Source: Azolla caroliniana
Taxonomy: Eukaryota; Plantae; Polypodiophyta
NCBI GenBank assembly: GCA_043228905.1
Contig: JBHGNT010000022.1
Location: 8,928,001-8,992,000 of the forward strand
Length of the DNA: 64,000 nucleotides
Direction: 5' to 3'
The translations under genes were made by a program, and so were the position numbers. How positions within the stretch are numbered: the stretch's first letter is position 1; every line of letters starts with the position of its first letter. A model generated the notes under the pieces. The model was given only the letters and a program-made list of their open reading frames with translations, had not been told where the DNA came from and did not search any database. Below, piece by piece: positions 17,356 to 43,400 of this stretch.

Positions 17356-17753
17356 TTGGTGATGGTTTTTCTTATATACTTGTCTTCTTTACAATGTGCC
17401 TAACTATGATAATCTATTAAGAGAGTAAATTAGCACAAAAGAGAGTGAGTATGAGAACTATTAAGATAAGAATTTCCAAACTAGAGGCTCAAAAGTGATT
17501 GACAACCACTCAATCCTTATTCACCTCTTTCTACTCCCTCATCTGTCTTATCACCCTATCAATCTTCCATTCACCAGCCCATTTTGTTTCCCCCCCCATA
17601 TCACCACCCCCTCTATCATCAAGATCTTCCAACTTAAAACCTCACAGCCCTCCATCTATTTACATTGTTATTGTACCCCACTCACTATGATTATACATTC
17701 TCCTCCCTTCCCCATCCTCAACATCCTATATAAACCACCTTTTGTATGTACAT

Positions 17754-17812
17754 GACCTTTTGCACTGATGAGCTCTACCTAAAAGAGCGAAACTAGTTTG
17801 CTGCATAAGGTC
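17754..17812 (+). ncRNA. Type I hammerhead ribozyme, copy 1
   Basis: GACCTTTTGCA-CTGATGA-GCTC(loop)GAGC-GAAA-CTAGTT-TGCTGCATAAGGTC. Conserved core, with helices I and II pairing. Confidence 0.88.
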
Positions 17813-17841
17813 TTTCCTTTTATTTTAATGGAATTTTCCTG

Positions 17842-17894
<53 letters not shown>

Positions 17895-17931
17895 GTGTGC
17901 TTAGAATCTTTTCTTATTACATTATCTATGT

Positions 17932-18070
17932 AAACCCTAGACCTAATCCCGAAACCCTAATCCTGAAACCCTAATCTCGAAACCCAAAACCCTAATCCCA
18001 AAACCCTAATCCCGAAGCCCTAAACCCTAATCCCAAAACCCTAAACCCTAATCCGGAAACCCTAAACCCT
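17932..18070 (+). repeat. Plant-telomere-like heptamer block in the PLE pseudo-LTR (also at 23511-23649, 29092-29230, 34673-34811 and 40254-40392)
   Basis: About 20 phased 7-mers: AAACCCT alternating with AATCCCG/AATCCCA variants. Preceded by a (CT)n tract. Confidence 0.85.
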
Positions 18071-18160
18071 TTCCTATTACATTATCTACCATATCTAAAA
18101 GTCGCTCGCACTCCTTGTATCAACCTTACGGTTAATAAACAAAGCTAGATCGTGTTTTCT

Positions 18161-20701
18161 ATGGAGGGCTTATCATCGGAGTTTGGAACCCATAATAGTG
18201 ATAGTTCGACTCGCATCGAATCACCATTCAATGCCGAGTTCCCTCCACAAGAGATGATGACTTTTGCAGCGGCTACTTCCACTACACCTACCCCAACGAA
18301 ACCTAGAAGCGCCAACAAACGTCCAACTAAAAGACCGCGAGCTCCAGTAGTCTCAACTACTCCGACCCCTGCAAAAACTACTAGTACCCAGGTAATCTCC
18401 AATGAATCACCGCTAATTTCCCAACACTTTGAAGATTACAAGTGTAGAATAATCGCAGAGTTTAAAAACCTCTATCGAAAAGCTCAAAAAGCTAAAAAAA
18501 CATATAGTCGTATGTCAAACCTTAATTCTCAGAATATAGCCCCTCATAGCTTGAGAATCCAGCCCCCAAGACTAATTATTGAGCACGAAGATATAAATAA
18601 AAGCCTACAACTAGAGTTTGCTTCCATCACAACACAATATAGTAAAGATCTCACTACCACATATGTCAAGCATTTAGATAGTCTTGTCCATTACTACACA
18701 AAAACAGTAGATGATTTTCCTATGACTGTACGAGCTGATATTCTCAAGATTGCTAATCTCCTAAAAGCCCCTGTTTGTTTTGACGAAGTAGAGGAATCCG
18801 ATTCAAGTCCAAACTCATTTAGCAAACAGCTTGAAATTTTCCAAGAAGAGTTAGCAACTAATATTCTAAAAGAATGTAATACTATAGCTCTCTCATTCAC
18901 TTATAGGGAAGCCTTTAAAGTTGCTGCTATGCAAAGAAAAGATAAAGCCCAATCACTAAATGAGAACACTCAAAGCACAAGTAAGCACCATATTAGAGAG
19001 ATAGACATAGATATGGAGTCAGATGATGATATTGAAGATGATATTGAAAAAGTTGTCGACAGTTTTGAGAAAGTACAATATAATAAATTTCAGTATAAAG
19101 ATAAAGACTATAATCCTAACTCGAGAATTAACCCTAACCTTAATTTGAGAACAACCCCTAAGCCCAACCCTAACCCTAACCCGAATCCCAACCCTAACCC
19201 TAATTTGAGAACAAACCCGAATCCCAACCCTAACCCTAACTTGAGAACAAACCCGAAACCCAACCCTAACCCTAACTTGAGAAAAGAACCCAACCCTAAC
19301 CCTAACCCTAACCCTAACCCTAACCCTAACCCTAATTTCAGAACACACCCTAACCCTAACCCTAATCCTAACACTAACCCAAACCCTAACCCTCGGCCTC
19401 CATCAGCAAACCCGAAGCCTCCTCCACCACATTTTCACCGCGGACCATCCAACCACCGCAACCACCGCGGACCATCCAACCACCGCAACCACCCTCACTT
19501 CATCCGCGACCATCCTCAATTCATCTGCAACATGAATAACAATGAAGTTAGCATCAACCCGAACCTCAACCATCAAAACCCACAAGTACTTTTCTATAGA
19601 TCGAACGAGCTTTCGGCAGGCCCGAACATAAACTCGGCCTACCGCCACCATAACCCGAACTCCAATTTCACGACACATGCTTCCCTTCGTACAGGTTCTT
19701 GGCTTCATCCACCACAAGATCACCCACACCGACCACCATCATCACTCTTCGGCGGCAACACGGACATCAACCACTTTAATCATCCACCACGAGATCTCCA
19801 TCAACTACCACCATCATCACTTTTCGATGGCCACAGAGACACGAGCCACCATACACATGCTTGGTCACAGGCTGCACACCGAGGACCCCCGTCTCTGGTC
19901 CATAGCTTCTACTCTTCGGCTGCACCTGCTAGTTTCTCGTCGGCCCAACATAGCCATCCACAACAGGACGAGATTAATTCACAGGCGGGCCATAACGCTG
20001 TCCCAAACTCAGGTCCTGCGCTCGACTACAATAGAAAGCATCTCCCCCATTCTCACCTTCCCCCTCTACTCTCCAACCCTCCTCCATATACTAAGCCCCT
20101 CGATACCTCTCCCCCTCAATTTTCTTTCCCTCCTCCTACGCTAGGGCAGCAACATAGCCCATCCCTTTACCCATATCCCACTCACTCTCAAAACCTTCCC
20201 CCTACACTTCTTAATAATTCTCTGTATACCCCCCCGTTACTTTCCAATATTCCCCTCCATAACCCCATGCCCCTTTTTTGTAATGATCCCCACCCTAATT
20301 ACCCCCCTAACATTTTGTATAATTTTGGTCTTGCCCCTTCCCCAATCTCTAATATAGCCCCAAACCCCCTCAATATTTTCACAAACCCCCCCAATATTTT
20401 CACACACTCCTCCCATACCCCCCTCTCTTTTCCTAATAATTCCACACACGGCAACCCCCTCTTATTTCCACATAATATAAATAAGAACCCCTCCCCATTT
20501 ACGTCTAATACCCCTTTCCATTTTCCTGTTAGTAACCCCTCCCTATTTACATCTAATACCCCTTCCCTTTTTTGTAATTCTAACCCATCTGCCCCAGCCA
20601 CCCACCCACATAATAAATCAAACCCACACAACTCTTACAAACCCCCCTATCAACCCCCATCTAAAACTCCAACTCATGTGTCGAAACCAAAAAACGTGTA
20701 G
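18161..20701 (+). CDS. PLE ORF1, copy 1: helical N-terminal region, acidic patch, Pro-Asn repeats and a long P/N/H/S-rich low-complexity tail
   Basis: 849-codon ORF counted from the GTG at 18152; first ATG at 18161. The protein is identical in all four units. Confidence 0.85.
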   Translation: MEGLSSEFGTHNSDSSTRIESPFNAEFPPQEMMTFAAATSTTPTPTKPRSANKRPTKRPRAPVVSTTPTPAKTTSTQVISNESPLISQHFEDYKCRIIAEFKNLYRKAQKAKKTYSRMSNLNSQNIAPHSLRIQPPRLIIEHEDINKSLQLEFASITTQYSKDLTTTYVKHLDSLVHYYTKTVDDFPMTVRADILKIANLLKAPVCFDEVEESDSSPNSFSKQLEIFQEELATNILKECNTIALSFTYREAFKVAAMQRKDKAQSLNENTQSTSKHHIREIDIDMESDDDIEDDIEKVVDSFEKVQYNKFQYKDKDYNPNSRINPNLNLRTTPKPNPNPNPNPNPNPNLRTNPNPNPNPNLRTNPKPNPNPNLRKEPNPNPNPNPNPNPNPNFRTHPNPNPNPNTNPNPNPRPPSANPKPPPPHFHRGPSNHRNHRGPSNHRNHPHFIRDHPQFICNMNNNEVSINPNLNHQNPQVLFYRSNELSAGPNINSAYRHHNPNSNFTTHASLRTGSWLHPPQDHPHRPPSSLFGGNTDINHFNHPPRDLHQLPPSSLFDGHRDTSHHTHAWSQAAHRGPPSLVHSFYSSAAPASFSSAQHSHPQQDEINSQAGHNAVPNSGPALDYNRKHLPHSHLPPLLSNPPPYTKPLDTSPPQFSFPPPTLGQQHSPSLYPYPTHSQNLPPTLLNNSLYTPPLLSNIPLHNPMPLFCNDPHPNYPPNILYNFGLAPSPISNIAPNPLNIFTNPPNIFTHSSHTPLSFPNNSTHGNPLLFPHNINKNPSPFTSNTPFHFPVSNPSLFTSNTPSLFCNSNPSAPATHPHNKSNPHNSYKPPYQPPSKTPTHVSKPKNV

Positions 20702-20746
20702 TGAGGCGTGCTAAACGAATTAGTAAACGGTTTAAGCACGCCTTAC
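20689..20746 (+). promoter_or_regulatory. Putative -1 programmed ribosomal frameshift signal (also at 26268-26325, 31849-31906 and 37430-37487)
   Basis: A AAA AAC in the ORF1 frame, a 5-nt spacer, then a 12-bp stem GTGAGGCGTGCT / AGCACGCCTTAC. The -1 frame is the RT frame. Confidence 0.8.
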
Positions 20747-22669
20747 ACCCTTGTAAGCGTCTTTTTTACATACTAGATAGGCCCCCTTTGACACGTGATA
20801 CGTACATGTGGCTAGGTAAAGAAAACTCCCACTTCCCTTTCTCCCCTTATACTAAATCACGCCCTAAAAGGCTTAGATACAAGTTTTGGAAACCACTTAC
20901 TCCCACCATAGACACTACTTCCATCTTACAAAGTAAAATTCATAATCTTTCAAGTTACACCCTTAGTAAACTAGAAATGAAACTTTTAAACCTAGGACTT
21001 AAGTTTATACCCCCTTGCCCCCCACCTACTAACCAATCCATTCTTCAAGAATACCAAAACCTAAGTAGATCCTTGAGACTTAAACATTTCTTTAGAAAAT
21101 CCAACTCTCCTCCCTCTAATCCCTTCAAACTACCCAACCCGAATTGGAACCCTCCTACTAAATATCCACCATTAGAATCTATACTCCATAAACACAATAT
21201 CTCTCTCTCCACAAACCTCCATGATAATATATTACCTAATATCAAAATACCACTACACCTCCAATTAGCAATAACTAGCCTTAAAAATAATAATAAAATA
21301 ACCATCCTACCAGCGGACAAAAACATTGGAGTTTGTGTCCTCGATAAAAAAACATACTTAGATAAAGCCCTAGAACATTTATCCGACATCACTACATATA
21401 AAAAAGTTGATAGTCTCCCATTAGAAGAACTTTTAAGTCGACTACAAGACATAGTCAATTGTAATCGTAATATCTTATCTCTCATAGAAATAGAATTTAT
21501 CCTACACAAACCTCCTAAAGGTTACTCAATACCTAATATGTACTTCTTGCCAAAAGTACATAAAAGTCCTGTTAGCTATAGACCGATTTGCTCATATAAC
21601 GGTTCATTATTTGAACAAACGTCTAAATGGCTTCACCATCAACTCCTCCCCATACTTCTAGTTCAAAAACAGTATCTTAGGGACTCCCATTCCCTTGTCC
21701 AAACTTTAGAACAACTTATAACACCACCCAATAGCTTCATTTTTTCTTTTGATGTTGAATCCCTCTACCAGCATCCCACCTAAACTAGGACTCTCTGCCC
21801 TAAAAAACCTTATTGCCCCCCACTTTTCTAACCAAAAAACCAATTTGATTTACACCCTTAGTGCCCTCACCTTAGAATACCACTTCCTTAAATTTAACAA
21901 CCAAATTTATCAACAGGTAAAAGGAACAGCCATGGGTAGTAATTTTTCCGTCGTGTATGCATGTCTCTTCCTCTCATATCTAGAAAATTCCAATCCATCA
22001 CCCCACCTTTTCTATTTCACTAGGTATATTGATGATGCCTTTGGCGTCTGGACTGGTACTAAAATCCAACTTCTCGAATACCTAAACTTCTATAGTAACT
22101 CTACTCAAAACTCTATAAAACTAACCATACACACTTCTTACACGAAACTACCCTTTTTAGACCTTTGGATTAGATTAGATAATAATAGATTCACCTTTAA
22201 TTGCTTTCAAAAAACACTTAACACATATCAATACATCCCTTATTCCTCCAATCACCCTCTACATGTGAAAAATAGTTTTGTTTCAAATGAACTTAAAAGA
22301 TATATGGTTAGAGAAAGCACGGCCCTAGGTTATTTAAATATGCAAAAAAAATTCTTTACGAGACTTAGAGCCCGAGGTTATCCCACACATTTTATTCTAA
22401 ATAACTTTCGAAAACACCCTTACTCCCTTAGACACACTCTCCTTTTCAAAGAAAAAACTAAAAAGACCACCCCACCCACTATCTTTAAACTTAGATATAC
22501 TCGCCATACCCCCACACTAATTATTAAGAAAATACTAACTAACCTACACTATGATATCCAATTAGATCCCCAACTACAACATATCCCTAAACCCATTATT
22601 TGTTGGACTAAATCCAAAAACCTCCACTCCCTTCTAGTAAAAACTAAAAACATCCTAGAGCCACTATAA
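20701..22669 (+). pseudogene. PLE RT ORF2, copy 1, broken by a 2-bp deletion after 21769
   Basis: CTCTACCAGC here versus CTCTACCCTAGC in copies 2-4. This splits the ORF into 360-aa and 306-aa pieces (real mutation or consensus error). Confidence 0.85.
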
Positions 22670-23330
22670 ACATATTTTCTCACCCTTCATTTAATCTATC
22701 CCCCTTCCTTGTTCCTCTCTCCTTCCCCCTTACTTTTATTTTGTAGTCACACACATCTACTTTTTTCCCCCAATATTTCCCTTATATCTCACTAAAAACT
22801 ATATTCTATCTCCCCCTCCCTTTTTTTCCCCCCCAATATTTCCCTTATATCTCACTAAAAACTATATTCCATCTCCCCCTCCCCCCTTTTTTTCCATTTC
22901 TCATCCCCTCTTCCTCTCACTACCTTTTTTTCCATTTCTCATCCCCTCTTCCTCTCACTACCTTTTTATACACTCTCTCTCTTCCCTCTTCCCTCAACCC
23001 CTCTCCCTAATACCTCTTATTAACTTCCTTTAACTTTCCCTTCTTTCTTTTATTTACATATAATTACACACCCTACCACTCATTCATTTCCCCTTATTCA
23101 CCTCTTTCTACTCCCTCATCTGTCTTATCACCCTATCAATCTTCCATTCACCAGCCCATTTTGTTTCCCCCCCCATATCACCACCCCCTCTATCATCAAG
23201 ATCTTCCAACTTAAAACCTCACAGCCCTCCATCTATTTACATTGTTATTGTACCCCACTCACTATGATTATACATTCTCCTCCCTTCCCCATCCTCAACA
23301 TCCTATATAAACCACCTTTTGTATGTACAT

Positions 23331-23389
23331 GACCTTTTGCACTGATGAGCTCTACCTAAAAGAGCGAAACTAGTTTGCTGCATAAGGTC
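23331..23389 (+). ncRNA. Type I hammerhead ribozyme, copy 2
   Basis: Identical to 17754-17812. Confidence 0.88.
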
Positions 23390-23418
23390 TTTCCTTTTAT
23401 TTTAATGGAATTTTCCTG

Positions 23419-23473
<55 letters not shown>

Positions 23474-23739
23474 GTGTGCTTAGAATCTTTTCTTATTACA
23501 TTATCTATGTAAACCCTAGACCTAATCCCGAAACCCTAATCCTGAAACCCTAATCTCGAAACCCAAAACCCTAATCCCAAAACCCTAATCCCGAAGCCCT
23601 AAACCCTAATCCCAAAACCCTAAACCCTAATCCGGAAACCCTAAACCCTTTCCTATTACATTATCTACCATATCTAAAAGTCGCTCGCACTCCTTGTATC
23701 AACCTTACGGTTAATAAACAAAGCTAGATCGTGTTTTCT

Positions 23740-26280
23740 ATGGAGGGCTTATCATCGGAGTTTGGAACCCATAATAGTGATAGTTCGACTCGCATCGAAT
23801 CACCATTCAATGCCGAGTTCCCTCCACAAGAGATGATGACTTTTGCAGCGGCTACTTCCACTACACCTACCCCAACGAAACCTAGAAGCGCCAACAAACG
23901 TCCAACTAAAAGACCGCGAGCTCCAGTAGTCTCAACTACTCCGACCCCTGCAAAAACTACTAGTACCCAGGTAATCTCCAATGAATCACCGCTAATTTCC
24001 CAACACTTTGAAGATTACAAGTGTAGAATAATCGCAGAGTTTAAAAACCTCTATCGAAAAGCTCAAAAAGCTAAAAAAACATATAGTCGTATGTCAAACC
24101 TTAATTCTCAGAATATAGCCCCTCATAGCTTGAGAATCCAGCCCCCAAGACTAATTATTGAGCACGAAGATATAAATAAAAGCCTACAACTAGAGTTTGC
24201 TTCCATCACAACACAATATAGTAAAGATCTCACTACCACATATGTCAAGCATTTAGATAGTCTTGTCCATTACTACACAAAAACAGTAGATGATTTTCCT
24301 ATGACTGTACGAGCTGATATTCTCAAGATTGCTAATCTCCTAAAAGCCCCTGTTTGTTTTGACGAAGTAGAGGAATCCGATTCAAGTCCAAACTCATTTA
24401 GCAAACAGCTTGAAATTTTCCAAGAAGAGTTAGCAACTAATATTCTAAAAGAATGTAATACTATAGCTCTCTCATTCACTTATAGGGAAGCCTTTAAAGT
24501 TGCTGCTATGCAAAGAAAAGATAAAGCCCAATCACTAAATGAGAACACTCAAAGCACAAGTAAGCACCATATTAGAGAGATAGACATAGATATGGAGTCA
24601 GATGATGATATTGAAGATGATATTGAAAAAGTTGTCGACAGTTTTGAGAAAGTACAATATAATAAATTTCAGTATAAAGATAAAGACTATAATCCTAACT
24701 CGAGAATTAACCCTAACCTTAATTTGAGAACAACCCCTAAGCCCAACCCTAACCCTAACCCGAATCCCAACCCTAACCCTAATTTGAGAACAAACCCGAA
24801 TCCCAACCCTAACCCTAACTTGAGAACAAACCCGAAACCCAACCCTAACCCTAACTTGAGAAAAGAACCCAACCCTAACCCTAACCCTAACCCTAACCCT
24901 AACCCTAACCCTAATTTCAGAACACACCCTAACCCTAACCCTAATCCTAACACTAACCCAAACCCTAACCCTCGGCCTCCATCAGCAAACCCGAAGCCTC
25001 CTCCACCACATTTTCACCGCGGACCATCCAACCACCGCAACCACCGCGGACCATCCAACCACCGCAACCACCCTCACTTCATCCGCGACCATCCTCAATT
25101 CATCTGCAACATGAATAACAATGAAGTTAGCATCAACCCGAACCTCAACCATCAAAACCCACAAGTACTTTTCTATAGATCGAACGAGCTTTCGGCAGGC
25201 CCGAACATAAACTCGGCCTACCGCCACCATAACCCGAACTCCAATTTCACGACACATGCTTCCCTTCGTACAGGTTCTTGGCTTCATCCACCACAAGATC
25301 ACCCACACCGACCACCATCATCACTCTTCGGCGGCAACACGGACATCAACCACTTTAATCATCCACCACGAGATCTCCATCAACTACCACCATCATCACT
25401 TTTCGATGGCCACAGAGACACGAGCCACCATACACATGCTTGGTCACAGGCTGCACACCGAGGACCCCCGTCTCTGGTCCATAGCTTCTACTCTTCGGCT
25501 GCACCTGCTAGTTTCTCGTCGGCCCAACATAGCCATCCACAACAGGACGAGATTAATTCACAGGCGGGCCATAACGCTGTCCCAAACTCAGGTCCTGCGC
25601 TCGACTACAATAGAAAGCATCTCCCCCATTCTCACCTTCCCCCTCTGCTCTCCAACCCTCCTCCATATACTAAGCCCCTCGATACCTCTCCCCCTCAATT
25701 TTCTTTCCCTCCTCCTACGCTAGGGCAGCAACATAGCCCATCCCTTTACCCATATCCCACTCACTCTCAAAACCTTCCCCCTACACTTCTTAATAATTCT
25801 CTGTATACCCCCCCGTTACTTTCCAATATTCCCCTCCATAACCCCATGCCCCTTTTTTGTAATGATCCCCACCCTAATTACCCCCCTAACATTTTGTATA
25901 ATTTTGGTCTTGCCCCTTCCCCAATCTCTAATATAGCCCCAAACCCCCTCAATATTTTCACAAACCCCCCCAATATTTTCACACACTCCTCCCATACCCC
26001 CCTCTCTTTTCCTAATAATTCCACACACGGCAACCCCCTCTTATTTCCACATAATATAAATAAGAACCCCTCCCCATTTACGTCTAATACCCCTTTCCAT
26101 TTTCCTGTTAGTAACCCCTCCCTATTTACATCTAATACCCCTTCCCTTTTTTGTAATTCTAACCCATCTGCCCCAGCCACCCACCCACATAATAAATCAA
26201 ACCCACACAACTCTTACAAACCCCCCTATCAACCCCCATCTAAAACTCCAACTCATGTGTCGAAACCAAAAAACGTGTAG
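23740..26280 (+). CDS. PLE ORF1, copy 2
   Basis: Same protein as copy 1. Confidence 0.85.
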   Translation: MEGLSSEFGTHNSDSSTRIESPFNAEFPPQEMMTFAAATSTTPTPTKPRSANKRPTKRPRAPVVSTTPTPAKTTSTQVISNESPLISQHFEDYKCRIIAEFKNLYRKAQKAKKTYSRMSNLNSQNIAPHSLRIQPPRLIIEHEDINKSLQLEFASITTQYSKDLTTTYVKHLDSLVHYYTKTVDDFPMTVRADILKIANLLKAPVCFDEVEESDSSPNSFSKQLEIFQEELATNILKECNTIALSFTYREAFKVAAMQRKDKAQSLNENTQSTSKHHIREIDIDMESDDDIEDDIEKVVDSFEKVQYNKFQYKDKDYNPNSRINPNLNLRTTPKPNPNPNPNPNPNPNLRTNPNPNPNPNLRTNPKPNPNPNLRKEPNPNPNPNPNPNPNPNFRTHPNPNPNPNTNPNPNPRPPSANPKPPPPHFHRGPSNHRNHRGPSNHRNHPHFIRDHPQFICNMNNNEVSINPNLNHQNPQVLFYRSNELSAGPNINSAYRHHNPNSNFTTHASLRTGSWLHPPQDHPHRPPSSLFGGNTDINHFNHPPRDLHQLPPSSLFDGHRDTSHHTHAWSQAAHRGPPSLVHSFYSSAAPASFSSAQHSHPQQDEINSQAGHNAVPNSGPALDYNRKHLPHSHLPPLLSNPPPYTKPLDTSPPQFSFPPPTLGQQHSPSLYPYPTHSQNLPPTLLNNSLYTPPLLSNIPLHNPMPLFCNDPHPNYPPNILYNFGLAPSPISNIAPNPLNIFTNPPNIFTHSSHTPLSFPNNSTHGNPLLFPHNINKNPSPFTSNTPFHFPVSNPSLFTSNTPSLFCNSNPSAPATHPHNKSNPHNSYKPPYQPPSKTPTHVSKPKNV

Positions 26281-28250
26281 TGAGGCGTGCTAAACGAATT
26301 AGTAAACGGTTTAAGCACGCCTTACACCCTTGTAAGCGTCTTTTTTACATACTAGATAGGCCCCCTTTGACACGTGATACGTACATGTGGCTAGGTAAAG
26401 AAAACTCCCACTTCCCTTTCTCCCCTTATACTAAATCACGCCCTAAAAGGCTTAGATACAAGTTTTGGAAACCACTTACTCCCACCATAGACACTACTTC
26501 CATCTTACAAAGTAAAATTCATAATCTTTCAAGTTACACCCTTAGTAAACTAGAAATGAAACTTTTAAACCTAGGACTTAAGTTTATACCCCCTTGCCCC
26601 CCACCTACTAACCAATCCATTCTTCAAGAATACCAAAACCTAAGTAGATCCTTGAGACTTAAACATTTCTTTAGAAAATCCAACTCTCCTCCCTCTAATC
26701 CCTTCAAACTACCCAACCCGAATTGGAACCCTCCTACTAAATATCCACCATTAGAATCTATACTCCATAAACACAATATCTCTCTCTCCACAAACCTCCA
26801 TGATAATATATTACCTAATATCAAAATACCACTACACCTCCAATTAGCAATAACTAGCCTTAAAAATAATAATAAAATAACCATCCTACCAGCGGACAAA
26901 AACATTGGAGTTTGTGTCCTCGATAAAAAAACATACTTAGATAAAGCCCTAGAACATTTATCCGACATCACTACATATAAAAAAGTTGATAGTCTCCCAT
27001 TAGAAGAACTTTTAAGTCGACTACAAGACATAGTCAATTGTAATCGTAATATCTTATCTCTCATAGAAATAGAATTTATCCTACACAAACCTCCTAAAGG
27101 TTACTCAATACCTAATATGTACTTCTTGCCAAAAGTACATAAAAGTCCTGTTAGCTATAGACCGATTTGCTCATATAACGGTTCATTATTTGAACAAACG
27201 TCTAAATGGCTTCACCATCAACTCCTCCCCATACTTCTAGTTCAAAAACAGTATCTTAGGGACTCCCATTCCCTTGTCCAAACTTTAGAACAACTTATAA
27301 CACCACCCAATAGCTTCATTTTTTCTTTTGATGTTGAATCCCTCTACCCTAGCATCCCACCTAAACTAGGACTCTCTGCCCTAAAAAACCTTATTGCCCC
27401 CCACTTTTCTAACCAAAAAACCAATTTGATTTACACCCTTAGTGCCCTCACCTTAGAATACCACTTCCTTAAATTTAACAACCAAATTTATCAACAGGTA
27501 AAAGGAACAGCCATGGGTAGTAATTTTTCCGTCGTGTATGCATGTCTCTTCCTCTCATATCTAGAAAATTCCAATCCATCACCCCACCTTTTCTATTTCA
27601 CTAGGTATATTGATGATGCCTTTGGCGTCTGGACTGGTACTAAAATCCAACTTCTCGAATACCTAAACTTCTATAGTAACTCTACTCAAAACTCTATAAA
27701 ACTAACCATACACACTTCTTACACGAAACTACCCTTTTTAGACCTTTGGATTAGATTAGATAATAATAGATTCACCTTTAATTGCTTTCAAAAAACACTT
27801 AACACATATCAATACATCCCTTATTCCTCCAATCACCCTCTACATGTGAAAAATAGTTTTGTTTCAAATGAACTTAAAAGATATATGGTTAGAGAAAGCA
27901 CGGCCCTAGGTTATTTAAATATGCAAAAAAAATTCTTTACGAGACTTAGAGCCCGAGGTTATCCCACACATTTTATTCTAAATAACTTTCGAAAACACCC
28001 TTACTCCCTTAGACACACTCTCCTTTTCAAAGAAAAAACTAAAAAGACCACCCCACCCACTATCTTTAAACTTAGATATACTCGCCATACCCCCACACTA
28101 ATTATTAAGAAAATACTAACTAACCTACACTATGATATCCAATTAGATCCCCAACTACAACATATCCCTAAACCCATTATTTGTTGGACTAAATCCAAAA
28201 ACCTCCACTCCCTTCTAGTAAAAACTAAAAACATCCTAGAGCCACTATAA
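26280..28250 (+). CDS. Penelope-like reverse transcriptase without endonuclease, copy 2 (probably translated as a -1 frameshift fusion to ORF1)
   Basis: Motifs ILPADKN, LPKVHK..YRPICS, SFDVESLYPSIP, QQVKGTAMGS, RYIDD, LPFLDL, SNHP and RGYP. The ORF ends just after KSKNLHSLLV with no GIY-YIG domain. Confidence 0.93.
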   Translation: MRRAKRISKRFKHALHPCKRLFYILDRPPLTRDTYMWLGKENSHFPFSPYTKSRPKRLRYKFWKPLTPTIDTTSILQSKIHNLSSYTLSKLEMKLLNLGLKFIPPCPPPTNQSILQEYQNLSRSLRLKHFFRKSNSPPSNPFKLPNPNWNPPTKYPPLESILHKHNISLSTNLHDNILPNIKIPLHLQLAITSLKNNNKITILPADKNIGVCVLDKKTYLDKALEHLSDITTYKKVDSLPLEELLSRLQDIVNCNRNILSLIEIEFILHKPPKGYSIPNMYFLPKVHKSPVSYRPICSYNGSLFEQTSKWLHHQLLPILLVQKQYLRDSHSLVQTLEQLITPPNSFIFSFDVESLYPSIPPKLGLSALKNLIAPHFSNQKTNLIYTLSALTLEYHFLKFNNQIYQQVKGTAMGSNFSVVYACLFLSYLENSNPSPHLFYFTRYIDDAFGVWTGTKIQLLEYLNFYSNSTQNSIKLTIHTSYTKLPFLDLWIRLDNNRFTFNCFQKTLNTYQYIPYSSNHPLHVKNSFVSNELKRYMVRESTALGYLNMQKKFFTRLRARGYPTHFILNNFRKHPYSLRHTLLFKEKTKKTTPPTIFKLRYTRHTPTLIIKKILTNLHYDIQLDPQLQHIPKPIICWTKSKNLHSLLVKTKNILEPL

Positions 28251-28970: not shown

Positions 28971-28999
28971 TTTCCTTTTATTTTAATGGAATTTTCCTG

Positions 29000-29054
<55 letters not shown>

Positions 29055-34551: not shown

Positions 34552-34580
34552 TTTCCTTTTATTTTAATGGAATTTTCCTG

Positions 34581-34635
<55 letters not shown>

Positions 34636-37442: not shown

Positions 37443-39412
37443 TGAGGCGTGCTAAACGAATTAGTAAACGGTTTAAGCACGCCTTACACCCTTGTAAGCG
37501 TCTTTTTTACATACTAGATAGGCCCCCTTTGACACGTGATACGTACATGTGGCTAGGTAAAGAAAACTCCCACTTCCCTTTCTCCCCTTATACTAAATCA
37601 CGCCCTAAAAGGCTTAGATACAAGTTTTGGAAACCACTTACTCCCACCATAGACACTACTTCCATCTTACAAAGTAAAATTCATAATCTTTCAAGTTACA
37701 CCCTTAGTAAACTAGAAATGAAACTTTTAAACCTAGGACTTAAGTTTATACCCCCTTGCCCCCCACCTACTAACCAATCCATTCTTCAAGAATACCAAAA
37801 CCTAAGTAGATCCTTGAGACTTAAACATTTCTTTAGAAAATCCAACTCTCCTCCCTCTAATCCCTTCAAACTACCCAACCCGAATTGGAACCCTCCTACT
37901 AAATATCCACCATTAGAATCTATACTCCATAAACACAATATCTCTCTCTCCACAAACCTCCATGATAATATATTACCTAATATCAAAATACCACTACACC
38001 TCCAATTAGCAATAACTAGCCTTAAAAATAATAATAAAATAACCATCCTACCAGCGGACAAAAACATTGGAGTTTGTGTCCTCGATAAAAAAACATACTT
38101 AGATAAAGCCCTAGAACATTTATCCGACATCACTACATATAAAAAAGTTGATAGTCTCCCATTAGAAGAACTTTTAAGTCGACTACAAGACATAGTCAAT
38201 TGTAATCGTAATATCTTATCTCTCATAGAAATAGAATTTATCCTACACAAACCTCCTAAAGGTTACTCAATACCTAATATGTACTTCTTGCCAAAAGTAC
38301 ATAAAAGTCCTGTTAGCTATAGACCGATTTGCTCATATAACGGTTCATTATTTGAACAAACGTCTAAATGGCTTCACCATCAACTCCTCCCCATACTTCT
38401 AGTTCAAAAACAGTATCTTAGGGACTCCCATTCCCTTGTCCAAACTTTAGAACAACTTATAACACCACCCAATAGCTTCATTTTTTCTTTTGATGTTGAA
38501 TCCCTCTACCCTAGCATCCCACCTAAACTAGGACTCTCTGCCCTAAAAAACCTTATTGCCCCCCACTTTTCTAACCAAAAAACCAATTTGATTTACACCC
38601 TTAGTGCCCTCACCTTAGAATACCACTTCCTTAAATTTAACAACCAAATTTATCAACAGGTAAAAGGAACAGCCATGGGTAGTAATTTTTCCGTCGTGTA
38701 TGCATGTCTCTTCCTCTCATATCTAGAAAATTCCAATCCATCACCCCACCTTTTCTATTTCACTAGGTATATTGATGATGCCTTTGGCGTCTGGACTGGT
38801 ACTAAAATCCAACTTCTCGAATACCTAAACTTCTATAGTAACTCTACTCAAAACTCTATAAAACTAACCATACACACTTCTTACACGAAACTACCCTTTT
38901 TAGACCTTTGGATTAGATTAGATAATAATAGATTCACCTTTAATTGCTTTCAAAAAACACTTAACACATATCAATACATCCCTTATTCCTCCAATCACCC
39001 TCTACATGTGAAAAATAGTTTTGTTTCAAATGAACTTAAAAGATATATGGTTAGAGAAAGCACGGCCCTAGGTTATTTAAATATGCAAAAAAAATTCTTT
39101 ACGAGACTTAGAGCCCGAGGTTATCCCACACATTTTATTCTAAATAACTTTCGAAAACACCCTTACTCCCTTAGACACACTCTCCTTTTCAAAGAAAAAA
39201 CTAAAAAGACCACCCCACCCACTATCTTTAAACTTAGATATACTCGCCATACCCCCACACTAATTATTAAGAAAATACTAACTAACCTACACTATGATAT
39301 CCAATTAGATCCCCAACTACAACATATCCCTAAACCCATTATTTGTTGGACTAAATCCAAAAACCTCCACTCCCTTCTAGTAAAAACTAAAAACATCCTA
39401 GAGCCACTATAA
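37442..39412 (+). CDS. Penelope-like reverse transcriptase, copy 4
   Basis: Same 656-aa ORF as copy 2. Confidence 0.93.
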   Translation: MRRAKRISKRFKHALHPCKRLFYILDRPPLTRDTYMWLGKENSHFPFSPYTKSRPKRLRYKFWKPLTPTIDTTSILQSKIHNLSSYTLSKLEMKLLNLGLKFIPPCPPPTNQSILQEYQNLSRSLRLKHFFRKSNSPPSNPFKLPNPNWNPPTKYPPLESILHKHNISLSTNLHDNILPNIKIPLHLQLAITSLKNNNKITILPADKNIGVCVLDKKTYLDKALEHLSDITTYKKVDSLPLEELLSRLQDIVNCNRNILSLIEIEFILHKPPKGYSIPNMYFLPKVHKSPVSYRPICSYNGSLFEQTSKWLHHQLLPILLVQKQYLRDSHSLVQTLEQLITPPNSFIFSFDVESLYPSIPPKLGLSALKNLIAPHFSNQKTNLIYTLSALTLEYHFLKFNNQIYQQVKGTAMGSNFSVVYACLFLSYLENSNPSPHLFYFTRYIDDAFGVWTGTKIQLLEYLNFYSNSTQNSIKLTIHTSYTKLPFLDLWIRLDNNRFTFNCFQKTLNTYQYIPYSSNHPLHVKNSFVSNELKRYMVRESTALGYLNMQKKFFTRLRARGYPTHFILNNFRKHPYSLRHTLLFKEKTKKTTPPTIFKLRYTRHTPTLIIKKILTNLHYDIQLDPQLQHIPKPIICWTKSKNLHSLLVKTKNILEPL

Positions 39413-40073
39413 ACATATTTTCTCACCCTTCATTTAATCTATCCCCCTTCCTTGTTCCTCTCTCCTTCCCCCTTACTTTTATTTTGTAGTCACACACATC
39501 TACTTTTTTCCCCCAATATTTCCCTTATATCTCACTAAAAACTATATTCTATCTCCCCCTCCCTTTTTTTCCCCCCCAATATTTCCCTTATATCTCACTA
39601 AAAACTATATTCCATCTCCCCCTCCCCCCTTTTTTTCCATTTCTCATCCCCTCTTCCTCTCACTACCTTTTTTTCCATTTCTCATCCCCTCTTCCTCTCA
39701 CTACCTTTTTATACACTCTCTCTCTTCCCTCTTCCCTCAACCCCTCTCCCTAATACCTCTTATTAACTTCCTTTAACTTTCCCTTCTTTCTTTTATTTAC
39801 ATATAATTACACACCCTACCACTCATTCATTTCCCCTTATTCACCTCTTTCTACTCCCTCATCTGTCTTATCACCCTATCAATCTTCCATTCACCAGCCC
39901 ATTTTGTTTCCCCCCCCATATCACCACCCCCTCTATCATCAAGATCTTCCAACTTAAAACCTCACAGCCCTCCATCTATTTACATTGTTATTGTACCCCA
40001 CTCACTATGATTATACATTCTCCTCCCTTCCCCATCCTCAACATCCTATATAAACCACCTTTTGTATGTACAT

Positions 40074-40132
40074 GACCTTTTGCACTGATGAGCTCTACCT
40101 AAAAGAGCGAAACTAGTTTGCTGCATAAGGTC
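40074..40132 (+). ncRNA. Type I hammerhead ribozyme, copy 5
   Basis: Identical to 17754-17812. Confidence 0.88.
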
Positions 40133-40161
40133 TTTCCTTTTATTTTAATGGAATTTTCCTG

Positions 40162-40216
<55 letters not shown>

Positions 40217-40467
40217 GTGTGCTTAGAATCTTTTCTTATTACATTATCTATGTAAACCCTAGACCTAATCCCGAAACCCTAATCCTGAAACCCTAATCTC
40301 GAAACCCAAAACCCTAATCCCAAAACCCTAATCCCGAAGCCCTAAACCCTAATCCCAAAACCCTAAACCCTAATCCGGAAACCCTAAACCCTTTCCTATT
40401 ACATTATCTACCATATCTAAAAGTCGCTCGCACTCCTTGTATCAACCTTACGGTTAATAAACAAAGC

Positions 40468-43400
40468 TAGGACTGTCATCGATATCCTTTTTCGTGTATA
40501 AACAATGATCTGCATAGCTACGATCAAAGCCTTGAGAAAGCATAAAAGTATCAAACTTCTTATACCACTGTCGTGGTGCTTGTTTTAGGCCATACAAGCT
40601 ACGTTTTAGTTTGCATACCAAATGCTCTTTGTTAGAGACTACAAAACCCTTAGGTTGTTTCATGTAGATCTCTTCATCAATATCACCATGCAAAAAAGCG
40701 GTCTTTACATCCATTTGGTACAACTCCAAATTAAGCATTGCAGTGAGAGCAAATAGCACACGAAGTGTGGTCATCTTCACAACAGGAGAGAAGACCTCTT
40801 GGAAGTCAATACCTTCCTTCTGTGCATAACCCTTGGCAACTAATCTTGCCTTGTATTTTGGTTTCCCTTCAATTTCCTTTACCTTATAAACCCACTTATT
40901 TGGAAGAGCTTTCCTTCCTTGAGGTAAGGACACAAGATCCCATGTATCATTTGCATATAAAGATTTTATTTCTTCTTGCATTGCAAGCTCCCACTTACTA
41001 CTAAGTTCACATGACATTGCCTCCTTATAAGTAAGAGGTTCACCCTCATCTGACAGCATGACATAATGCAAAGAGGGGTCATATCTATATACCTGCCTCC
41101 TTGAACGATTAGACCTACGTACCCAATGATTAGTATTTTCTGGGATTGGTTCTAAATCTGGAGGAAAATCATTTTCAGCACTTTCTGGCTGTTGCGAACC
41201 ATGTCCAACATGTTGTTCGACATCTATATTTTGTTCTTCAGTACCTTCATCTCGTTGACCAATATCTTCATGAGCATCTCTTTGCTGTCCAACTTCTTCT
41301 GGCTCAAAGATAACCGGTTGACCATCATATTCAACCTTTGGTATAGCATCATGAGGTTTATTTTCAGGTTTTGTGGATGGCTGTAATTGCTGAAATGTAA
41401 CGCTCTTAGAGTTCCCAACAGAGGAACAAGCATTTTTCAGCAATTTTTCTTCATTAAAAACAACATCCCGACTGCGTACAATTTTTCTGGACTGAGGTAA
41501 CCAAATCCTATAGCCCATTTCACCTTCATCACCATAGCCCATAAAAATGCCCATGGTGGACTTAGCATCGAGCTTATTTCTCAGCTCACTTCTAATGTGT
41601 ACAAACGCATCACAACCGAAAATTCGTAAATGGTCATATGAAGCTGGTTTGCCAGACCAAACCTCCTCAGGGATTCCATTTTTTAAGGACTTGTTGGGAG
41701 AACGATTACATATATGAACCGCGGTTTTTAATGCTTCTCCCCAAAATTCATGAGGGAGATTAGTTGTGGACAGCATGCATCGTACTCGCTCACACAAGGT
41801 CCTATTATACCTTTCTGCCACCCCATTTGATGAAGGGTTATATGGAGCAGTAAGCTCTCTTTTAATACCATGTAAGTCACAATAAGACTTAAATTCTGCA
41901 GATGTAAACTCACCCCCATTATCTGTTCTGAGACATTTCAGTTTTGTCCCTTTTTGAGTAGTCACAAATGCATGAAAAGATTTAAATGCATCAAATGCAT
42001 CACCTTTTCTTTTCATCAAGTACACCCAAATCTTCCTAGAATAATCATCGATAAAGGAAATAAAATATGCAGCACCGCCCAAGGATTTTACAAGCATGCT
42101 ACATACATCAGAATGCACCAAATCTAGCACATTTGGTTTATGAGAGATACCAGAATAATAAGAATTTCTCACTTGTTTGCCAAATAGACAATCATTACAA
42201 AAAACCAGATTTGATCCTTTAACATCAAATCTTTTTAAAGCAGAAAGGACTTCAAGTCCTTTTTGGCTCATATGTCCTAATCTCTTATGCCAAAGCTCTA
42301 AACGAGAGTCGAATTCAGCAATAGCAAGAAACTTTCCAGGTAAAGCTTTACATTGCAAACAGTACAAAGTGCCCTTTTTGCAACCTTTCACAATAACCAT
42401 AGATCCTTTCTTTAGTTTCCATAATCCACCACCGAATAATGTGGTGTAACCATGCAAATCCATTTGTCCTACAGATAGCAAACTTTTCTTAATGCCAGGT
42501 ACATACCTAACATCTTTGAGCACAAGCTCTTGACCATTATCCAAAGACAAGTGTATGGTTCCAATACCATCAATATTGCAAGCACTATTGTTACCAAGAT
42601 AAACTTTTCCATAACTGCCTACATCAAATGTGGTAAAGCACTCCAAACATGGAGTAACATGAAAAGAAGCCCCAGAGTCTACTATCCATGTCTGTGTCAA
42701 TCCATCATCGATTGACAATAAAGCATCAATAACATCTGTTTTGGTGATTTGCATGTCTTGAACATGAGCTATAAAGGCATCACCTGTAATACAAAGTACA
42801 TTACCATCTTCACCAGATAGGTCTTCAATGATAACATTTGAAGCCATATTAGCTTTCTCTGTTGTATTAAACTTATCATCTTTGTTTTTCTTCTCTCCTA
42901 CATTCTTCTTCCTTTCTAGTTCCATCTTCCAATATCTACAATCAGGTTTCTTATGACCTTTACGGCCACAATGATAGCAAGTGATATCTTGTTGTTTTCC
43001 TTTCCCTCTACTCTTACTTCTATTTCTTTGTCCTACATTTGGGTTCCTCTTATCATATCTCCCCCTAATATTGTATGTTGAACCACTACCTTCTCCGCTA
43101 GATTGTCTTCTAATCTCTTCACTGAGAATAGAGCCCCGCACACCATCGAAGGTCAAGGTGGGGCTATTAGATAGTGAAACAACTAATGTTTCCCACGAAT
43201 CCGGTAAAGTCATAAGTAGGAAGATAGCTTTGAGCTTGTCATCAAAAGTTGGTAATCCTGAATCTTGTAGTTGGGAGAGAGTACCTGTGAATAAAGATAG
43301 ATGCTCTGTTGCACCTTTCGACTCATCAAGCCTCATACTGACAAGTTTTCTCATCAAATGCACCTGATTCACAGGAGAAGTATTCTCGTAAGTTTTCTTA

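What the first reader, a model, noticed from the sequence alone, without database searches (positions are those of the whole stretch)
17515..40470. Young tandem array of an endonuclease-less, telomerase-related Penelope-like retroelement at an interstitial, gene-proximal site in a plant
Seen: four almost identical 5.58-kb units plus about 635 bp of terminal redundancy. Each unit has ORF1, a PLE-type RT that stops where GIY-YIG would begin, a hammerhead, and telomere-like repeats. Ordinary genes (VAMP7, H3) lie 8-17 kb away and there is no terminal telomere tract in the window. Known: EN-deficient PLEs (Athena/Coprina type) are the sister group of TERT and are mostly described as head-to-tail chains at chromosome ends, with few plant examples. 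Inference: this is a recently active plant family that combines an RT, a ribozyme and telomere mimicry, and it can integrate internally without a nuclease of its own.
Basis: partly seen in the sequence, partly recalled or inferred. Interest (0 to 1): 0.92.

Follow-up and report, generated by a model that had tools for sequence, protein, structure and literature searches.

The report
Nuclease-free Penelope-like retroelement tandem array
A plant (possibly fern) chromosome segment holds four head-to-tail, almost identical copies of a telomerase-like retroelement that has no DNA-cutting enzyme, inserted away from any chromosome end at what looks like a repaired break; this kind of element is already known from spike moss and fungi, so it is a very well preserved new example, not a new kind.

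Summary
Positions 17515-40470 hold 4.11 head-to-tail units of 5,581 bp. Units 2-4 and the partial fifth are identical; unit 1 has three small differences, one of which breaks the RT frame. Each unit has a coiled-coil ORF1, a 656-aa Penelope-like RT, a type-I hammerhead and telomere-like repeats. The RT has an intact YIDD, ends before the GIY-YIG position, and best matches TERT by fold. No GIY-YIG is found in any frame. The hammerhead scores below Rfam's threshold but shows covariation in eight relatives. The RT sits in an all-nuclease-less clade with Selaginella, Ginkgo and Cryptomeria elements.

New findings:
- The array lies between two identical 3.8-kb direct copies of host DNA (part of a Copia element plus 169 bp), with 3-nt and 9/10-nt junction microhomologies.
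- Its right end is the family's normal 3' terminus, 12 nt before the ORF1 ATG. At that position relatives join real (CCCTAAA)n tracts.
- ORF2 is probably read by -1 frameshifting.

Best reading: the RT primed on a free 3' end at a break or stalled fork, without a nuclease. The element type is known (Coprina-like PLEs), so interest is moderate. An assembly artefact in copy number or in the duplication is not excluded.

The parts
17515..40470 (+). Tandem array of 4.11 units, period 5,581 bp. Unit 1 is 17515-23091, unit 2 is 23092-28672, unit 3 is 28673-34253, unit 4 is 34254-39834, and the partial fifth unit is 39835-40470.
17515..23091 (+). Unit 1, the only variant unit. It has (TC)24, a substitution at 20068, and a 2-bp deletion after 21769 that splits ORF2 into 20701-21783 and 21749-22669.
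23328..23398 (+). Type-I hammerhead ribozyme motif. Other copies are at 17751-17821, 28909-28979, 34490-34560 and 40071-40141. Helix III is the palindrome ACUAGU. Predicted cleavage in unit 3 is after 28956.
   Evidence: Rfam HH9 22.3 bits, below the gathering score. The motif is conserved in all related loci. 11 pairs are 91.8% paired, 7 of them with compensatory changes, against 29-41% in the slid controls.
23421..23471 (+). (TC)25 microsatellite between the hammerhead and the telomere-like tract. It is (TC)24 in unit 1 at 17844-17892. Other copies are at 29002-29052, 34583-34633 and 40164-40214.
23511..23648 (+). Degenerate heptamer tract of about 20 repeats of CCCTAAA/CCCTAAT/CCCGAAA, the C-strand of the plant telomere repeat on the sense strand. 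It is flanked by a 17/18 direct repeat TTCYTATTACATTATCTA. Other copies are at 17932-18069, 29092-29229, 34673-34810 and 40254-40391.
   Evidence: 82-85% match to the Cryptomeria and Selaginella (CCCTAAA)n tracts
23740..26280 (+). ORF1, 846 aa. Residues 1-83 are disordered, about 84-270 form a helical (coiled-coil-like) core, and the rest is a long Pro/Asn/His/Ser-rich tail. Other copies are at 18161-20701, 29321-31861 and 34902-37442.
   Evidence: (0 of 20,000 shuffles of the tail stay open)
24709..24972 (+). CCCTAA-like hexamer tract inside ORF1, read in frame as Pro-Asn repeats. Other copies are at 19130-19393, 30290-30553 and 35871-36134. A similar tract sits in ORF1 of the sister family (L002 1337-1417).
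26268..26327 (+). Putative -1 ribosomal frameshift signal. The slippery A_AAA_AAC is at 26268-26274, the ORF1 stop TAG at 26278-26280, and a stem-loop at about 26280-26327. ORF2 is in the -1 frame. The same signal lies at +5581 and +11162; in unit 1 the slippery site is at 20689-20695.
   Evidence: (-25.9 kcal/mol, z -3.9)
26280..28250 (+). ORF2, the PLE-type reverse transcriptase, 656 aa. It has the DKN motif (residues 206-208), YIDD (443-446) and a thumb, and no endonuclease. Other copies are at 31861-33831 and 37442-39412; the unit 1 copy at 20701-22669 is broken.
   Evidence: dN/dS 0.09-0.16 against sister families
13699..17524 (.). Left copy (A) of the flanking direct duplication: part of the Copia element plus 169 bp beyond its LTR. 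The last 10 bp (17515-17524) are the 9/10 junction microhomology.
40468..44293 (.). Right copy (A') of the flanking duplication, identical to A over 13699-17517. The first 3 bp (TAG, 40468-40470) are the junction microhomology. The Copia copy is cut inside its RT domain at this point.
12417..17355 (-). Complete Ty1/Copia LTR retrotransposon, the host context. LTRs are at 12417-12694 and 17078-17355 and are 98.9% alike. It is older than the array insertion.

Best explanation
What it is: a young tandem array of an autonomous, endonuclease-less Penelope-like retroelement of the Coprina-like plant lineage.

Each 5.58-kb unit runs in this order: short 5' leader; ORF1, a helical, probably RNA-binding or assembly protein with a disordered tail; a -1 frameshift signal; ORF2, a TERT-like reverse transcriptase; a G-poor 3' UTR; a dimer-type hammerhead; a (TC)n run; a degenerate C-strand telomere tract. 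The unit ends about 12 nt before the next ORF1 ATG.

Shown:
- the anatomy;
- absence of a nuclease;
- purifying selection on the RT;
- hammerhead covariation;
- relatives in the same host samples and in Cryptomeria that end at this same position against real (CCCTAAA)n tracts, in the orientation expected for cDNA primed on the telomeric G-overhang.

Inferred for this locus:
1. The element RNA was reverse-transcribed from its normal 3' end on a non-telomeric free 3'-OH inside a Copia element. This was a break or a nascent strand at a stalled fork, and 3 nt (UAG/CTA) of pairing were used.
2. Synthesis ran on for 4.1 units. The template was either a multimeric or circular RNA, or the enzyme made end-to-end template jumps.
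3. The cDNA end re-annealed through a 9/10-nt microhomology 3.8 kb behind the priming site.
4. Resumed DNA synthesis then duplicated 3.8 kb of host DNA.

The hammerhead needs two copies to form helix III. It probably trims longer-than-unit read-through transcripts and does not make the priming end.
For: Identity:
- The nearest 35 homologues lack PF01541. Named relatives are Cryptomeria, Selaginella and Ginkgo.
- The RT lies in a 25-row land-plant clade (support 99) inside a 39-row all-EN-minus clade (support 99).
- No EN in six frames.
- AF2 model pLDDT 88.4; the top six PDB fold matches are TERT, E down to 1.8e-12.
- dN/dS 0.09-0.16.
- Hammerhead covariation.

Tandem habit:
- L001 is a circular permutation of the unit with a k-mer overlap, from an independent data set.
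- Cryptomeria L007 has three 4.33-kb units.
- L016 and L021 are tandem.

Normal 3' end:
- L015 leaves the unit 7-24 nt before the ORF1 ATG and continues as (CCCTAAA)9.
- L007 does so 17 nt before the ATG.
- The window array ends 12 nt before the ATG position.
- A random breakpoint would fall within such a span in about 25 of 5,581 positions (my arithmetic).

Junctions: TAG microhomology on the right and 9/10 microhomology on the left; A and A' are identical over 3,819 bp.

Frameshift: the slippery site, a stop within two codons and a stem-loop are conserved in at least four sub-families, and the 35 codons before ORF2's first ATG are conserved.
Against: - A 3.8-kb target duplication is far larger than any usual target-primed insertion, and it is the classic footprint of DNA-level replicative template switching.
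- All three differences lie in the edge unit (chance about 0.014 if placed at random, my arithmetic). That pattern fits later homogenisation, a heterogeneous DNA donor, or assembly polishing better than one RNA template.
- There is no RNA evidence for the proposed 5' and 3' ends, for ribozyme cleavage or for frameshifting.
- In this family the telomere-like tract lies about 80 nt upstream of the 3' end, not at it.
- The hammerhead is below Rfam's curated threshold.
- A sequence profile against PDB finds only generic RTs, not TERT.
- The host genome could not be examined, so telomeric copies of this exact family and EN-bearing relatives in the same genome remain unknown.
Confidence: 0.6

Rival explanations
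1. DNA-level copying. A replication fork or broken end switched template (MMBIR/FoSTeS type) from position 17517 into a pre-existing PLE array elsewhere, for example at a telomere. It copied 22.96 kb and switched back at 13699, giving a duplication with a templated insert. No reverse transcription took place at this locus.
For: A kilobase-scale flanking duplication with microhomology at both junctions is the textbook footprint. The divergent edge unit would simply reflect heterogeneity in the donor array.
Against: The right end coincides within a few nucleotides with the family's normal 3' terminus, seen at telomere junctions in L015 and L007. A DNA template switch has no reason to stop there. 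No second copy or donor is available to examine.
Confidence: 0.2
2. Assembly artefact. The element is real, but the number of identical units and/or the 3.8-kb duplication were created by the assembler: repeat expansion, haplotype duplication, or polishing that homogenised inner units.
For: Units 2-4 and the two 3.8-kb copies are 100% identical, which is what collapsed or polished repeats look like. No reads are available.
Against: Both host-element junctions are specific, each with its own microhomology. Tandem units of the same family occur in independent assemblies (L001, L019) and in Cryptomeria. Unit 1 keeps its own variants.
Confidence: 0.12
3. A small insertion followed by local amplification. 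One or two units were inserted by any route, and unequal sister-chromatid exchange or replication slippage then expanded and homogenised the inner units.
For: All three differences are in the edge unit, as expected when inner repeats are homogenised. This is compatible with the main explanation for the first step.
Against: Nothing distinguishes it from multi-unit cDNA synthesis. Zero differences in 17.4 kb would require very recent expansion.
Confidence: 0.3
4. The cut was supplied in trans by another element's endonuclease, such as a LINE or an EN+ PLE, and this was followed by ordinary target-primed reverse transcription.
For: LINE fragments are present in the window (4972-7252).
Against: There is no short target-site duplication, no poly(A) and no recognisable nick-site motif. 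No EN+ PLE was seen among the host-derived contigs. The junctions look like microhomology-mediated repair.
Confidence: 0.05

Closest known systems
Coprina-type EN-deficient Penelope-like elements (fungi, diatom, Selaginella Sm1/Sm2)
   Same: RT without GIY-YIG, a hammerhead in the repeated flank, reverse-complement telomeric repeats, and head-to-tail organisation. The window's RT groups with a Selaginella EN-less PLE that has a hammerhead (41.5 bits) and CCCTAAA tracts. Literature: PMC8557442, PMC4209133, PMC13159263.
   Different: This copy is not at a telomere tract. It has two ORFs joined by a putative -1 frameshift, whereas Coprina is usually described with one ORF (PMC13159263). The telomere-like tract is degenerate and copied as part of the unit. 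The host lineage is probably new (possibly a fern).
Athena elements and Terminons of bdelloid rotifers
   Same: EN-less PLE RT, an upstream coiled-coil ORF1, a hammerhead next to C-rich telomere-complement repeats, and head-to-tail chains (PMC8557442, PMC12477314).
   Different: Athena is described as rotifer-specific and basal among PLEs. Terminon units can exceed 40 kb and capture genes. Here the unit is 5.6 kb and the RT groups with plant elements.
Neptune and other C-terminal EN+ PLEs
   Same: 32% identity over 585 aa, with the same DKN, RT and thumb layout. An EN+ clade is sister to the EN-less clade in my tree (support 92), as the literature reports for Neptune and Coprina (PMC8557442).
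   Different: Those carry a linker and a GIY-YIG nuclease after the thumb. Here the ORF stops about 60 aa after the last alignable residue and no EN exists in any frame.
Endonuclease-independent LINE-1 insertion and retroelement cDNA capture at double-strand breaks (from my own knowledge of the field; no paper read here)
   Same: A retroelement RT uses a pre-existing 3'-OH, the junctions show microhomology, and the normal short target duplication is missing.
   Different: Those events usually come with target deletions and single truncated copies. Here there is a multi-unit array and a 3.8-kb duplication.
Dryad (EN+ PLEs of conifers) and Chlamys/PLE-X of the green lineage
   Same: PLEs found in plants (PMC8557442).
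   Different: Dryad carries GIY-YIG and derives from arthropod-type PLEs. Chlamys has an N-terminal EN, and most Chlamys lack a canonical hammerhead. PLE-X targets 28S rDNA. None of these fits.

Membership tests
Penelope-like elements (PLE) | RT with the PLE-specific N-terminal DKG/DKN motif, RT motifs 1-7 (YxDD) and a thumb | tested here: met
   A205, D206 and K207 are nearly invariant, and D445, D446 (YIDD) are invariant, in a 63-protein alignment. 32% identity over 585 aa to EN+ PLE P0036, E 1e-64. Relatives carry the precomputed Pfam DUF8422 + RVT_1 + HTH_animal, as other PLE hits do.
Penelope-like elements (PLE) | Hammerhead ribozyme motif in the repeated flank (pLTR) | tested here: met
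   The type-I motif is below Rfam's gathering score (22.3 against 52). It is present in all related loci and shows covariation: 7 of 11 pairs have compensatory changes and 91.8% of cells are paired.
Penelope-like elements (PLE) | Partial or full tandem (pseudo-LTR) organisation | tested here: met
   4.11 units here. Tandem or permuted copies are seen in L001, L016, L019 and L007.
Penelope-like elements (PLE) | RT most closely related to telomerase RT | tested here: inconclusive
   The Foldseek top six PDB matches are TERT (E 1.8e-12 to 5e-10, TM about 0.4), ahead of LINE-1, R2 and group II RTs. The sequence profile finds only generic RTs. No tree with TERT could be built.
EN-deficient PLEs (Coprina/Athena type) | No GIY-YIG endonuclease, C-terminal or N-terminal | tested here: met
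   My EN profile recovered all held-out EN+ proteins but nothing in six frames of the window or of L001-L014. Pfam at E<=1 shows only RVT_1 in ORF2 and nothing credible in ORF1.
EN-deficient PLEs (Coprina/Athena type) | Reverse-complement telomeric repeats on the sense strand near the 3' end, next to the hammerhead | tested here: met
   A degenerate heptamer tract starts 136 nt after the predicted cleavage site and ends about 80 nt before the unit's 3' end. Sister families have AAACCCTAAACCC right at the 3' end.
EN-deficient PLEs (Coprina/Athena type) | Location at or next to telomeric repeats | tested here: not met
   This copy has no telomere-like 14-mer outside the units, with at least 17.5 kb and 23.5 kb of ordinary DNA on its two sides. 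Relatives do abut (CCCTAAA)n in the expected orientation: L015 and Cryptomeria L007. Genome-wide distribution is not testable here.
EN-deficient PLEs (Coprina/Athena type) | RT groups with named Coprina or Athena reference sequences | not testable with these tools
Indirectly, it groups (support 99) with a Selaginella EN-less PLE, and Selaginella Sm1/Sm2 are filed as Coprina in PMC13159263. The Rotaria hit P0111 matched my EN profile weakly (E 1.9e-9) and fell among EN+ rows in the other half of the tree on a long branch.
Dryad (conifer EN+ PLE) | C-terminal GIY-YIG nuclease | tested here: not met
Chlamys / PLE-X | N-terminal GIY-YIG (or descent from it), canonical hammerhead usually absent, rDNA target for PLE-X | tested here: not met
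   There is no N-terminal EN, a canonical hammerhead is present, and the target is a Copia element, not rDNA. The CxC motif was not examined.
Plant retrozymes | Small non-autonomous element without an RT, flanked by hammerheads, making circular RNA | tested here: not met
   The unit encodes its own RT and ORF1 and has one type-I hammerhead per 5.6 kb. RNA circularity was not tested.

The most novel reading that the evidence does not exclude
The telomerase-like RT of a nuclease-less PLE acts as a break or stalled-fork 'healer' inside plant chromosomes. It primes on any exposed 3' end with a few nucleotides of pairing and lays down several units in one event. The event is resolved by microhomology re-annealing behind the priming site, which creates kilobase-scale host duplications. 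This would be a direct footprint of how telomere-specialised retroelements colonise chromosome interiors, and it would be an RNA-templated route to segmental duplication.
Probability: 0.3. Interest if true: 0.75.

Novelty: new member of a known kind. Interest (0 to 1): 0.5.

Why it matters
EN-less PLEs are the closest living relatives of telomerase. They are thought to be confined to chromosome ends because they cannot cut DNA.

- This is a pristine internal insertion. It has the element's normal 3' end, microhomology at both junctions and an exact 3.8-kb host duplication. That gives a concrete, testable footprint for how such elements enter chromosome interiors and for what they do to the host locus.
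- The comparative data extend the group from Selaginella to gymnosperms and to a further, possibly fern, host that carries many families.
- The data define the 3' terminus of the transposition unit.
- They suggest gag-pol-like -1 frameshifting, which I did not find reported for PLEs in the searchable literature.
- None of this changes the known picture of what these elements are.

Tried and rejected
- Rfam at gathering thresholds on the whole window: nothing.
- phmmer of ORF2 against PDB: nothing. The profile against PDB found only generic RTs (DRT3, group II, retron) and no TERT.
- ORF1: no Pfam family; one homologue by word search; 57 unnamed representatives by exhaustive profile search; no significant fold match. 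Beyond 'helical, coiled-coil-like', its function stays open.
- Host identification failed by four routes. The Copia polyprotein search gave named hits only at 45-48% identity. Cluster members carried no organism names. A paper search for the ERZ accessions found nothing. The fern genome papers I opened do not mention Penelope. The only lead is that the exact H3 protein also occurs in assembly GCA_020310875.1. I recall this as Ceratopteris richardii, but I could not verify it.
- I tested whether the identity switch in the two-unit contig L019 falls at the inferred RNA ends. It falls near the end of ORF2 instead, so it is uninformative: either a recombinant or a graph chimera.
- Gladyshev & Arkhipova 2007 and Arkhipova et al. 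2017 are not held. Statements about them come from papers that cite them.
- ARAGORN found no tRNA.
- Retrozyme, Terminon, Dryad and Chlamys were considered and rejected on their defining features.
Unit 1's broken ORF2 and the ORF1/ORF2 frameshift product were never joined.
- No contig looked human.

Full report
OBSERVATION

The array is real. Self-BLAST aligns 17515-34889 with 23092-40470 at 99.97%. Repeat families show start-to-start spacings of 5577, 5579 and 5581 bp. A unit-by-unit alignment shows that units 2, 3, 4 and the 636-bp partial fifth unit are 100% identical. Unit 1 differs in three ways: (TC)24 instead of (TC)25, one substitution at 20068, and a 2-bp deletion after 21769 that splits its RT reading frame. 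Outside the array the window has no PLE remnant at protein or DNA level and no telomere-like 14-mer.

Histone H3 lies at 57094-57504(-) and a longin-domain, VAMP7-type exon at 52440-52778(-). I searched only that single exon by reference and assembled no spliced model.

ANATOMY OF A UNIT (coordinates of units 2 and 3)

- ORF1 (23740-26280) is 846 aa. Its tail stays open although 0 of 20,000 shuffles of that stretch do. A sister family has an 865-aa ORF1.
- The ORF1 core (about residues 86-290) is conserved as far as the Cryptomeria element. It is predicted as long helices with pLDDT above 90.
- ORF1 has no Pfam family, only 57 relatives among 1.84 billion representatives, and no significant fold match.
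- A CCCTAA-like hexamer tract (24709-24972) lies inside ORF1 and is read as Pro-Asn repeats. A similar tract sits in ORF1 of the sister family.
- ORF2 (26280-28250, 656 aa) is in the -1 frame of ORF1.
- The sequence CC_AAA_AAA_C puts a canonical A_AAA_AAC slippery site two codons before the ORF1 stop. A stem-loop follows (-25.9 kcal/mol, z -3.9).
- The slippery site, the stop and the stem are conserved in at least four sub-families, with one compensatory pair. The 35 codons before ORF2's first ATG are conserved.
- I therefore infer gag-pol-like -1 frameshifting. I never joined the two ORFs.
- After ORF2 comes a G-poor 3' UTR (2% G), then a hammerhead (28909-28979), (TC)25, and a 138-bp degenerate heptamer tract of CCCTAAA variants (29092-29229) flanked by a 17/18 direct repeat. 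About 90 nt further on is the next ORF1 ATG (29321).

REVERSE TRANSCRIPTASE AND NUCLEASE

- Pfam sees only RVT_1.
- The nearest 35 database relatives lack GIY-YIG. The named ones are from Cryptomeria japonica, Selaginella moellendorffii and Ginkgo. EN-bearing PLE proteins appear only from about 32% identity.
- ORF2 aligns with the EN+ protein P0036 over 585 aa (E 1e-64), up to residue 597 of ORF2 and 569 of P0036, and stops 59 aa later. P0036's GIY-YIG is at 691-773.
- I built a profile from the C-termini of ten EN+ hits. It recovered all nine held-out EN+ proteins (E<=2e-18). It found nothing in six frames of the window or of loci L001-L014.
- In a 108-protein tree the window's RT lies in an 8-row clade (support 100). 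That clade lies within a 25-row land-plant clade (99) with Selaginella basal and a Ginkgo+Cryptomeria group. This in turn lies within a 39-row clade without any EN+ member (99). An EN+ clade is sister (92). This matches the published loose association of Coprina with Neptune (PMC8557442).
- dN/dS against sister families is 0.09-0.16.
- The AlphaFold model is confident (pLDDT 88.4, pTM 0.84). Its six best PDB matches are TERTs, ahead of LINE-1 ORF2p, R2 and group II intron RTs. Sequence-only searches of PDB do not reach TERT.

HAMMERHEAD

Rfam's HH9 model scores 22.3 bits, below its gathering score of 52. However, a type-I motif with CUGAUGA...GAAA lies on the sense strand downstream of the RT in every related locus. 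In an eight-sequence alignment the three helices are 91.8% paired, 7 of 11 pairs have compensatory changes, and slid controls give 29-41%. Helix III is always a 6-nt palindrome (ACUAGU, ACCGGU, ACAUGU, AUGCAU). This is the dimer-forming architecture described for PLE and other eukaryotic hammerheads (PMC4209133).

RELATIVES AND HOST

- Families at 64-73% RT identity occur only in unnamed metagenome assemblies from two sample series.
- L001 is a circular permutation of the unit with a 119-bp k-mer overlap and 97-98% identity. L019 is about 100% identical to the window unit over 5.5 kb. So the same or a very close host was sampled independently, and the family is tandem there too.
- Cryptomeria L007 has three 4.33-kb tandem units followed by (CCCTAAA)n.
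- Selaginella L006 has a hammerhead at 41.5 bits, CCCTAAA tracts and 1.96-kb direct repeats.
- The host species could not be named. The exact H3 protein also occurs in GCA_020310875.1 on records of up to 207 Mb. I recall this as the fern Ceratopteris richardii, unverified. The RT clade's position as sister to the gymnosperm group, with Selaginella outside, would fit a fern.

CONTEXT OF THE INSERTION (new)

- The array lies between two direct copies of host DNA, 13699-17524 and 40468-44293.
- Each copy consists of part of a Copia element on the minus strand plus 169 bp beyond its LTR. The complete Copia is at 12417-17355. The right-hand copy is cut inside the RT domain.
- The single mismatch between the two copies lies inside the left junction. 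There the target reads CCTAATTCAC and the unit reads CCTTATTCAC, so the copies are identical over 3,819 bp and the left junction is a 9/10 microhomology. The right junction shares TAG.
- The Copia LTRs differ at 3 of 278 positions, so Copia is older than the array insertion.

THE RIGHT END IS THE NORMAL 3' TERMINUS

- In a sister family, contig L015 is identical to the tandem copies L016 and L021 for about 500 nt from the hammerhead. Then, 7-24 nt before the ORF1 ATG, it continues as perfect (CCCTAAA)9 to the contig end, while L016 and L021 continue into ORF1.
- The last Cryptomeria unit leaves the unit sequence 17 nt before the ATG and runs through a 17-mer satellite into (AAACCCT)n.
- The window's array ends 12 nt before the ATG position.
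- In all three cases the sense strand is followed by C-strand repeats or by the target. This is the orientation expected if cDNA is primed on a 3' end.
- A random DNA breakpoint would fall in such a span in roughly 25 of 5,581 positions (my arithmetic).

MECHANISM

Shown: an intact, selected, nuclease-less TERT-like RT; a conserved ribozyme; telomere-complement repeats; a defined 3' terminus; junction microhomologies; and an exact 3.8-kb duplication.

Inferred, in order:
1. The element's RNA was copied from its normal 3' end on a free 3'-OH on the minus strand at 40468-40471 (equivalent to 13699 in the left copy). This was a break or a nascent strand at a stalled fork.
2. Synthesis ran through 4.1 units, by multimeric or circular RNA or by end-to-end template jumps.
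3. The cDNA end re-annealed 3.8 kb behind the priming site.
4. Resumed DNA synthesis duplicated the intervening host DNA.

Rivals:
- DNA-level template switching into a donor array. It explains the duplication well but not the canonical 3' end.
- An assembly artefact in copy number or in the duplication.
- Later unequal exchange. This would explain why all three differences are in the edge unit (chance about 0.014, my arithmetic).
- A nuclease supplied in trans. No short target duplication or motif supports this.

COMPARISON AND NOVELTY

EN-less PLEs with hammerheads and telomere-complement repeats are established in rotifers (Athena), and in fungi, a diatom and Selaginella (Coprina) (PMC8557442, PMC4209133, PMC13159263, PMC12477314). 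Tandem organisation is a general PLE trait. This is therefore a new member of a known kind.

It adds some new details:
- a land-plant clade that includes gymnosperms and a further host with many families;
- a mapped 3' terminus;
- a probable -1 frameshift;
- an in-frame telomere-like tract in ORF1;
- a clean internal insertion with a kilobase-scale duplication.

I found no report of PLE frameshifting or of fern PLEs in the searchable library, which is not proof of absence.

LIMITS

There were no reads, no RNA data, no host genome and no named reference sequences. The two key papers were not held.

Noticed in passing
window 13699-17524 and 40468-44293: Exact 3.8-kb direct duplication of host DNA (partial Copia plus 169 bp) brackets the array. 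The only mismatch (17518 T against 44287 A) lies in the junction microhomology.
   Followed up: yes
window 26268-26327 (and +5581, +11162; slippery site 20689-20695 in unit 1): Putative -1 programmed frameshift signal between ORF1 and ORF2: A_AAA_AAC, a stop two codons later, and a strong stem-loop. It is conserved in sister families.
   Followed up: yes
L007 3767-3865, 8106-8204, 12445-12543; L006 19286-19374 and 19686-19774 (minus strand): Each Cryptomeria PLE unit carries a 5S-rRNA-like sequence (Rfam 33-38 bits, at or just below the gathering score of 38) between the RT and the hammerhead. Two 5S-like matches also lie near the Selaginella element.
   Followed up: no
window ORF1 23740-24729 versus L009/L010; RT versus the same loci: The ORF1 N-terminal part is 82% identical to that of family L009/L010, whereas the RTs are only 64-66% identical. 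This suggests modular recombination between families.
   Followed up: partly
L019 (whole contig, sense = minus strand): Two tandem units whose identity to the window unit is 75-95% up to about unit position 28100 and about 100% thereafter. It is either a recombinant array or a de Bruijn graph chimera.
   Followed up: partly
window 29071-29088 and 29231-29248 (same in every unit): A 17/18 direct repeat TTCYTATTACATTATCTA flanks the heptamer tract, as if the telomere-like tract had been captured between two copies of a terminal sequence.
   Followed up: no
window 60274-60576: An ORF matches the C-terminus of plastid Ycf1 (Pfam E 1.6e-9). This is probably a plastid-DNA insertion in the nuclear genome; neighbouring ORFs at 59.3-61.0 kb have no family.
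   Followed up: no
window 7384-7863: A 230-bp unit repeated 2.1 times carries a tRNA-like stretch (GTAGCTCAGTTGG...GGTTCAACCCC) next to (GA)n and (TC)n runs. ARAGORN and Rfam call no tRNA. It may be a tRNA-derived SINE.
   Followed up: no
window 4972-7252: Fragments of a non-LTR (LINE) retrotransposon: RVT_1 and zf-RVT in separate broken ORFs.
   Followed up: no
window 48593-49450; 3133-3465; 53253-53717: Small local tandem repeats: 286 bp x3, 64 bp x5.3 and 159 bp x2.8. The last lies close to the VAMP7-type exon.
   Followed up: no
window 57097-57504 (-): The exact H3 protein sequence also occurs many times in NCBI assembly GCA_020310875.1 on records of 110 kb to 207 Mb. From memory this is the fern Ceratopteris richardii (not verified), and it is a hint to the host lineage.
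   Followed up: partly
L013 2239-2245: In this copy the slippery site reads AAAATAC instead of AAAAAAC. It may be a defective copy.
   Followed up: no
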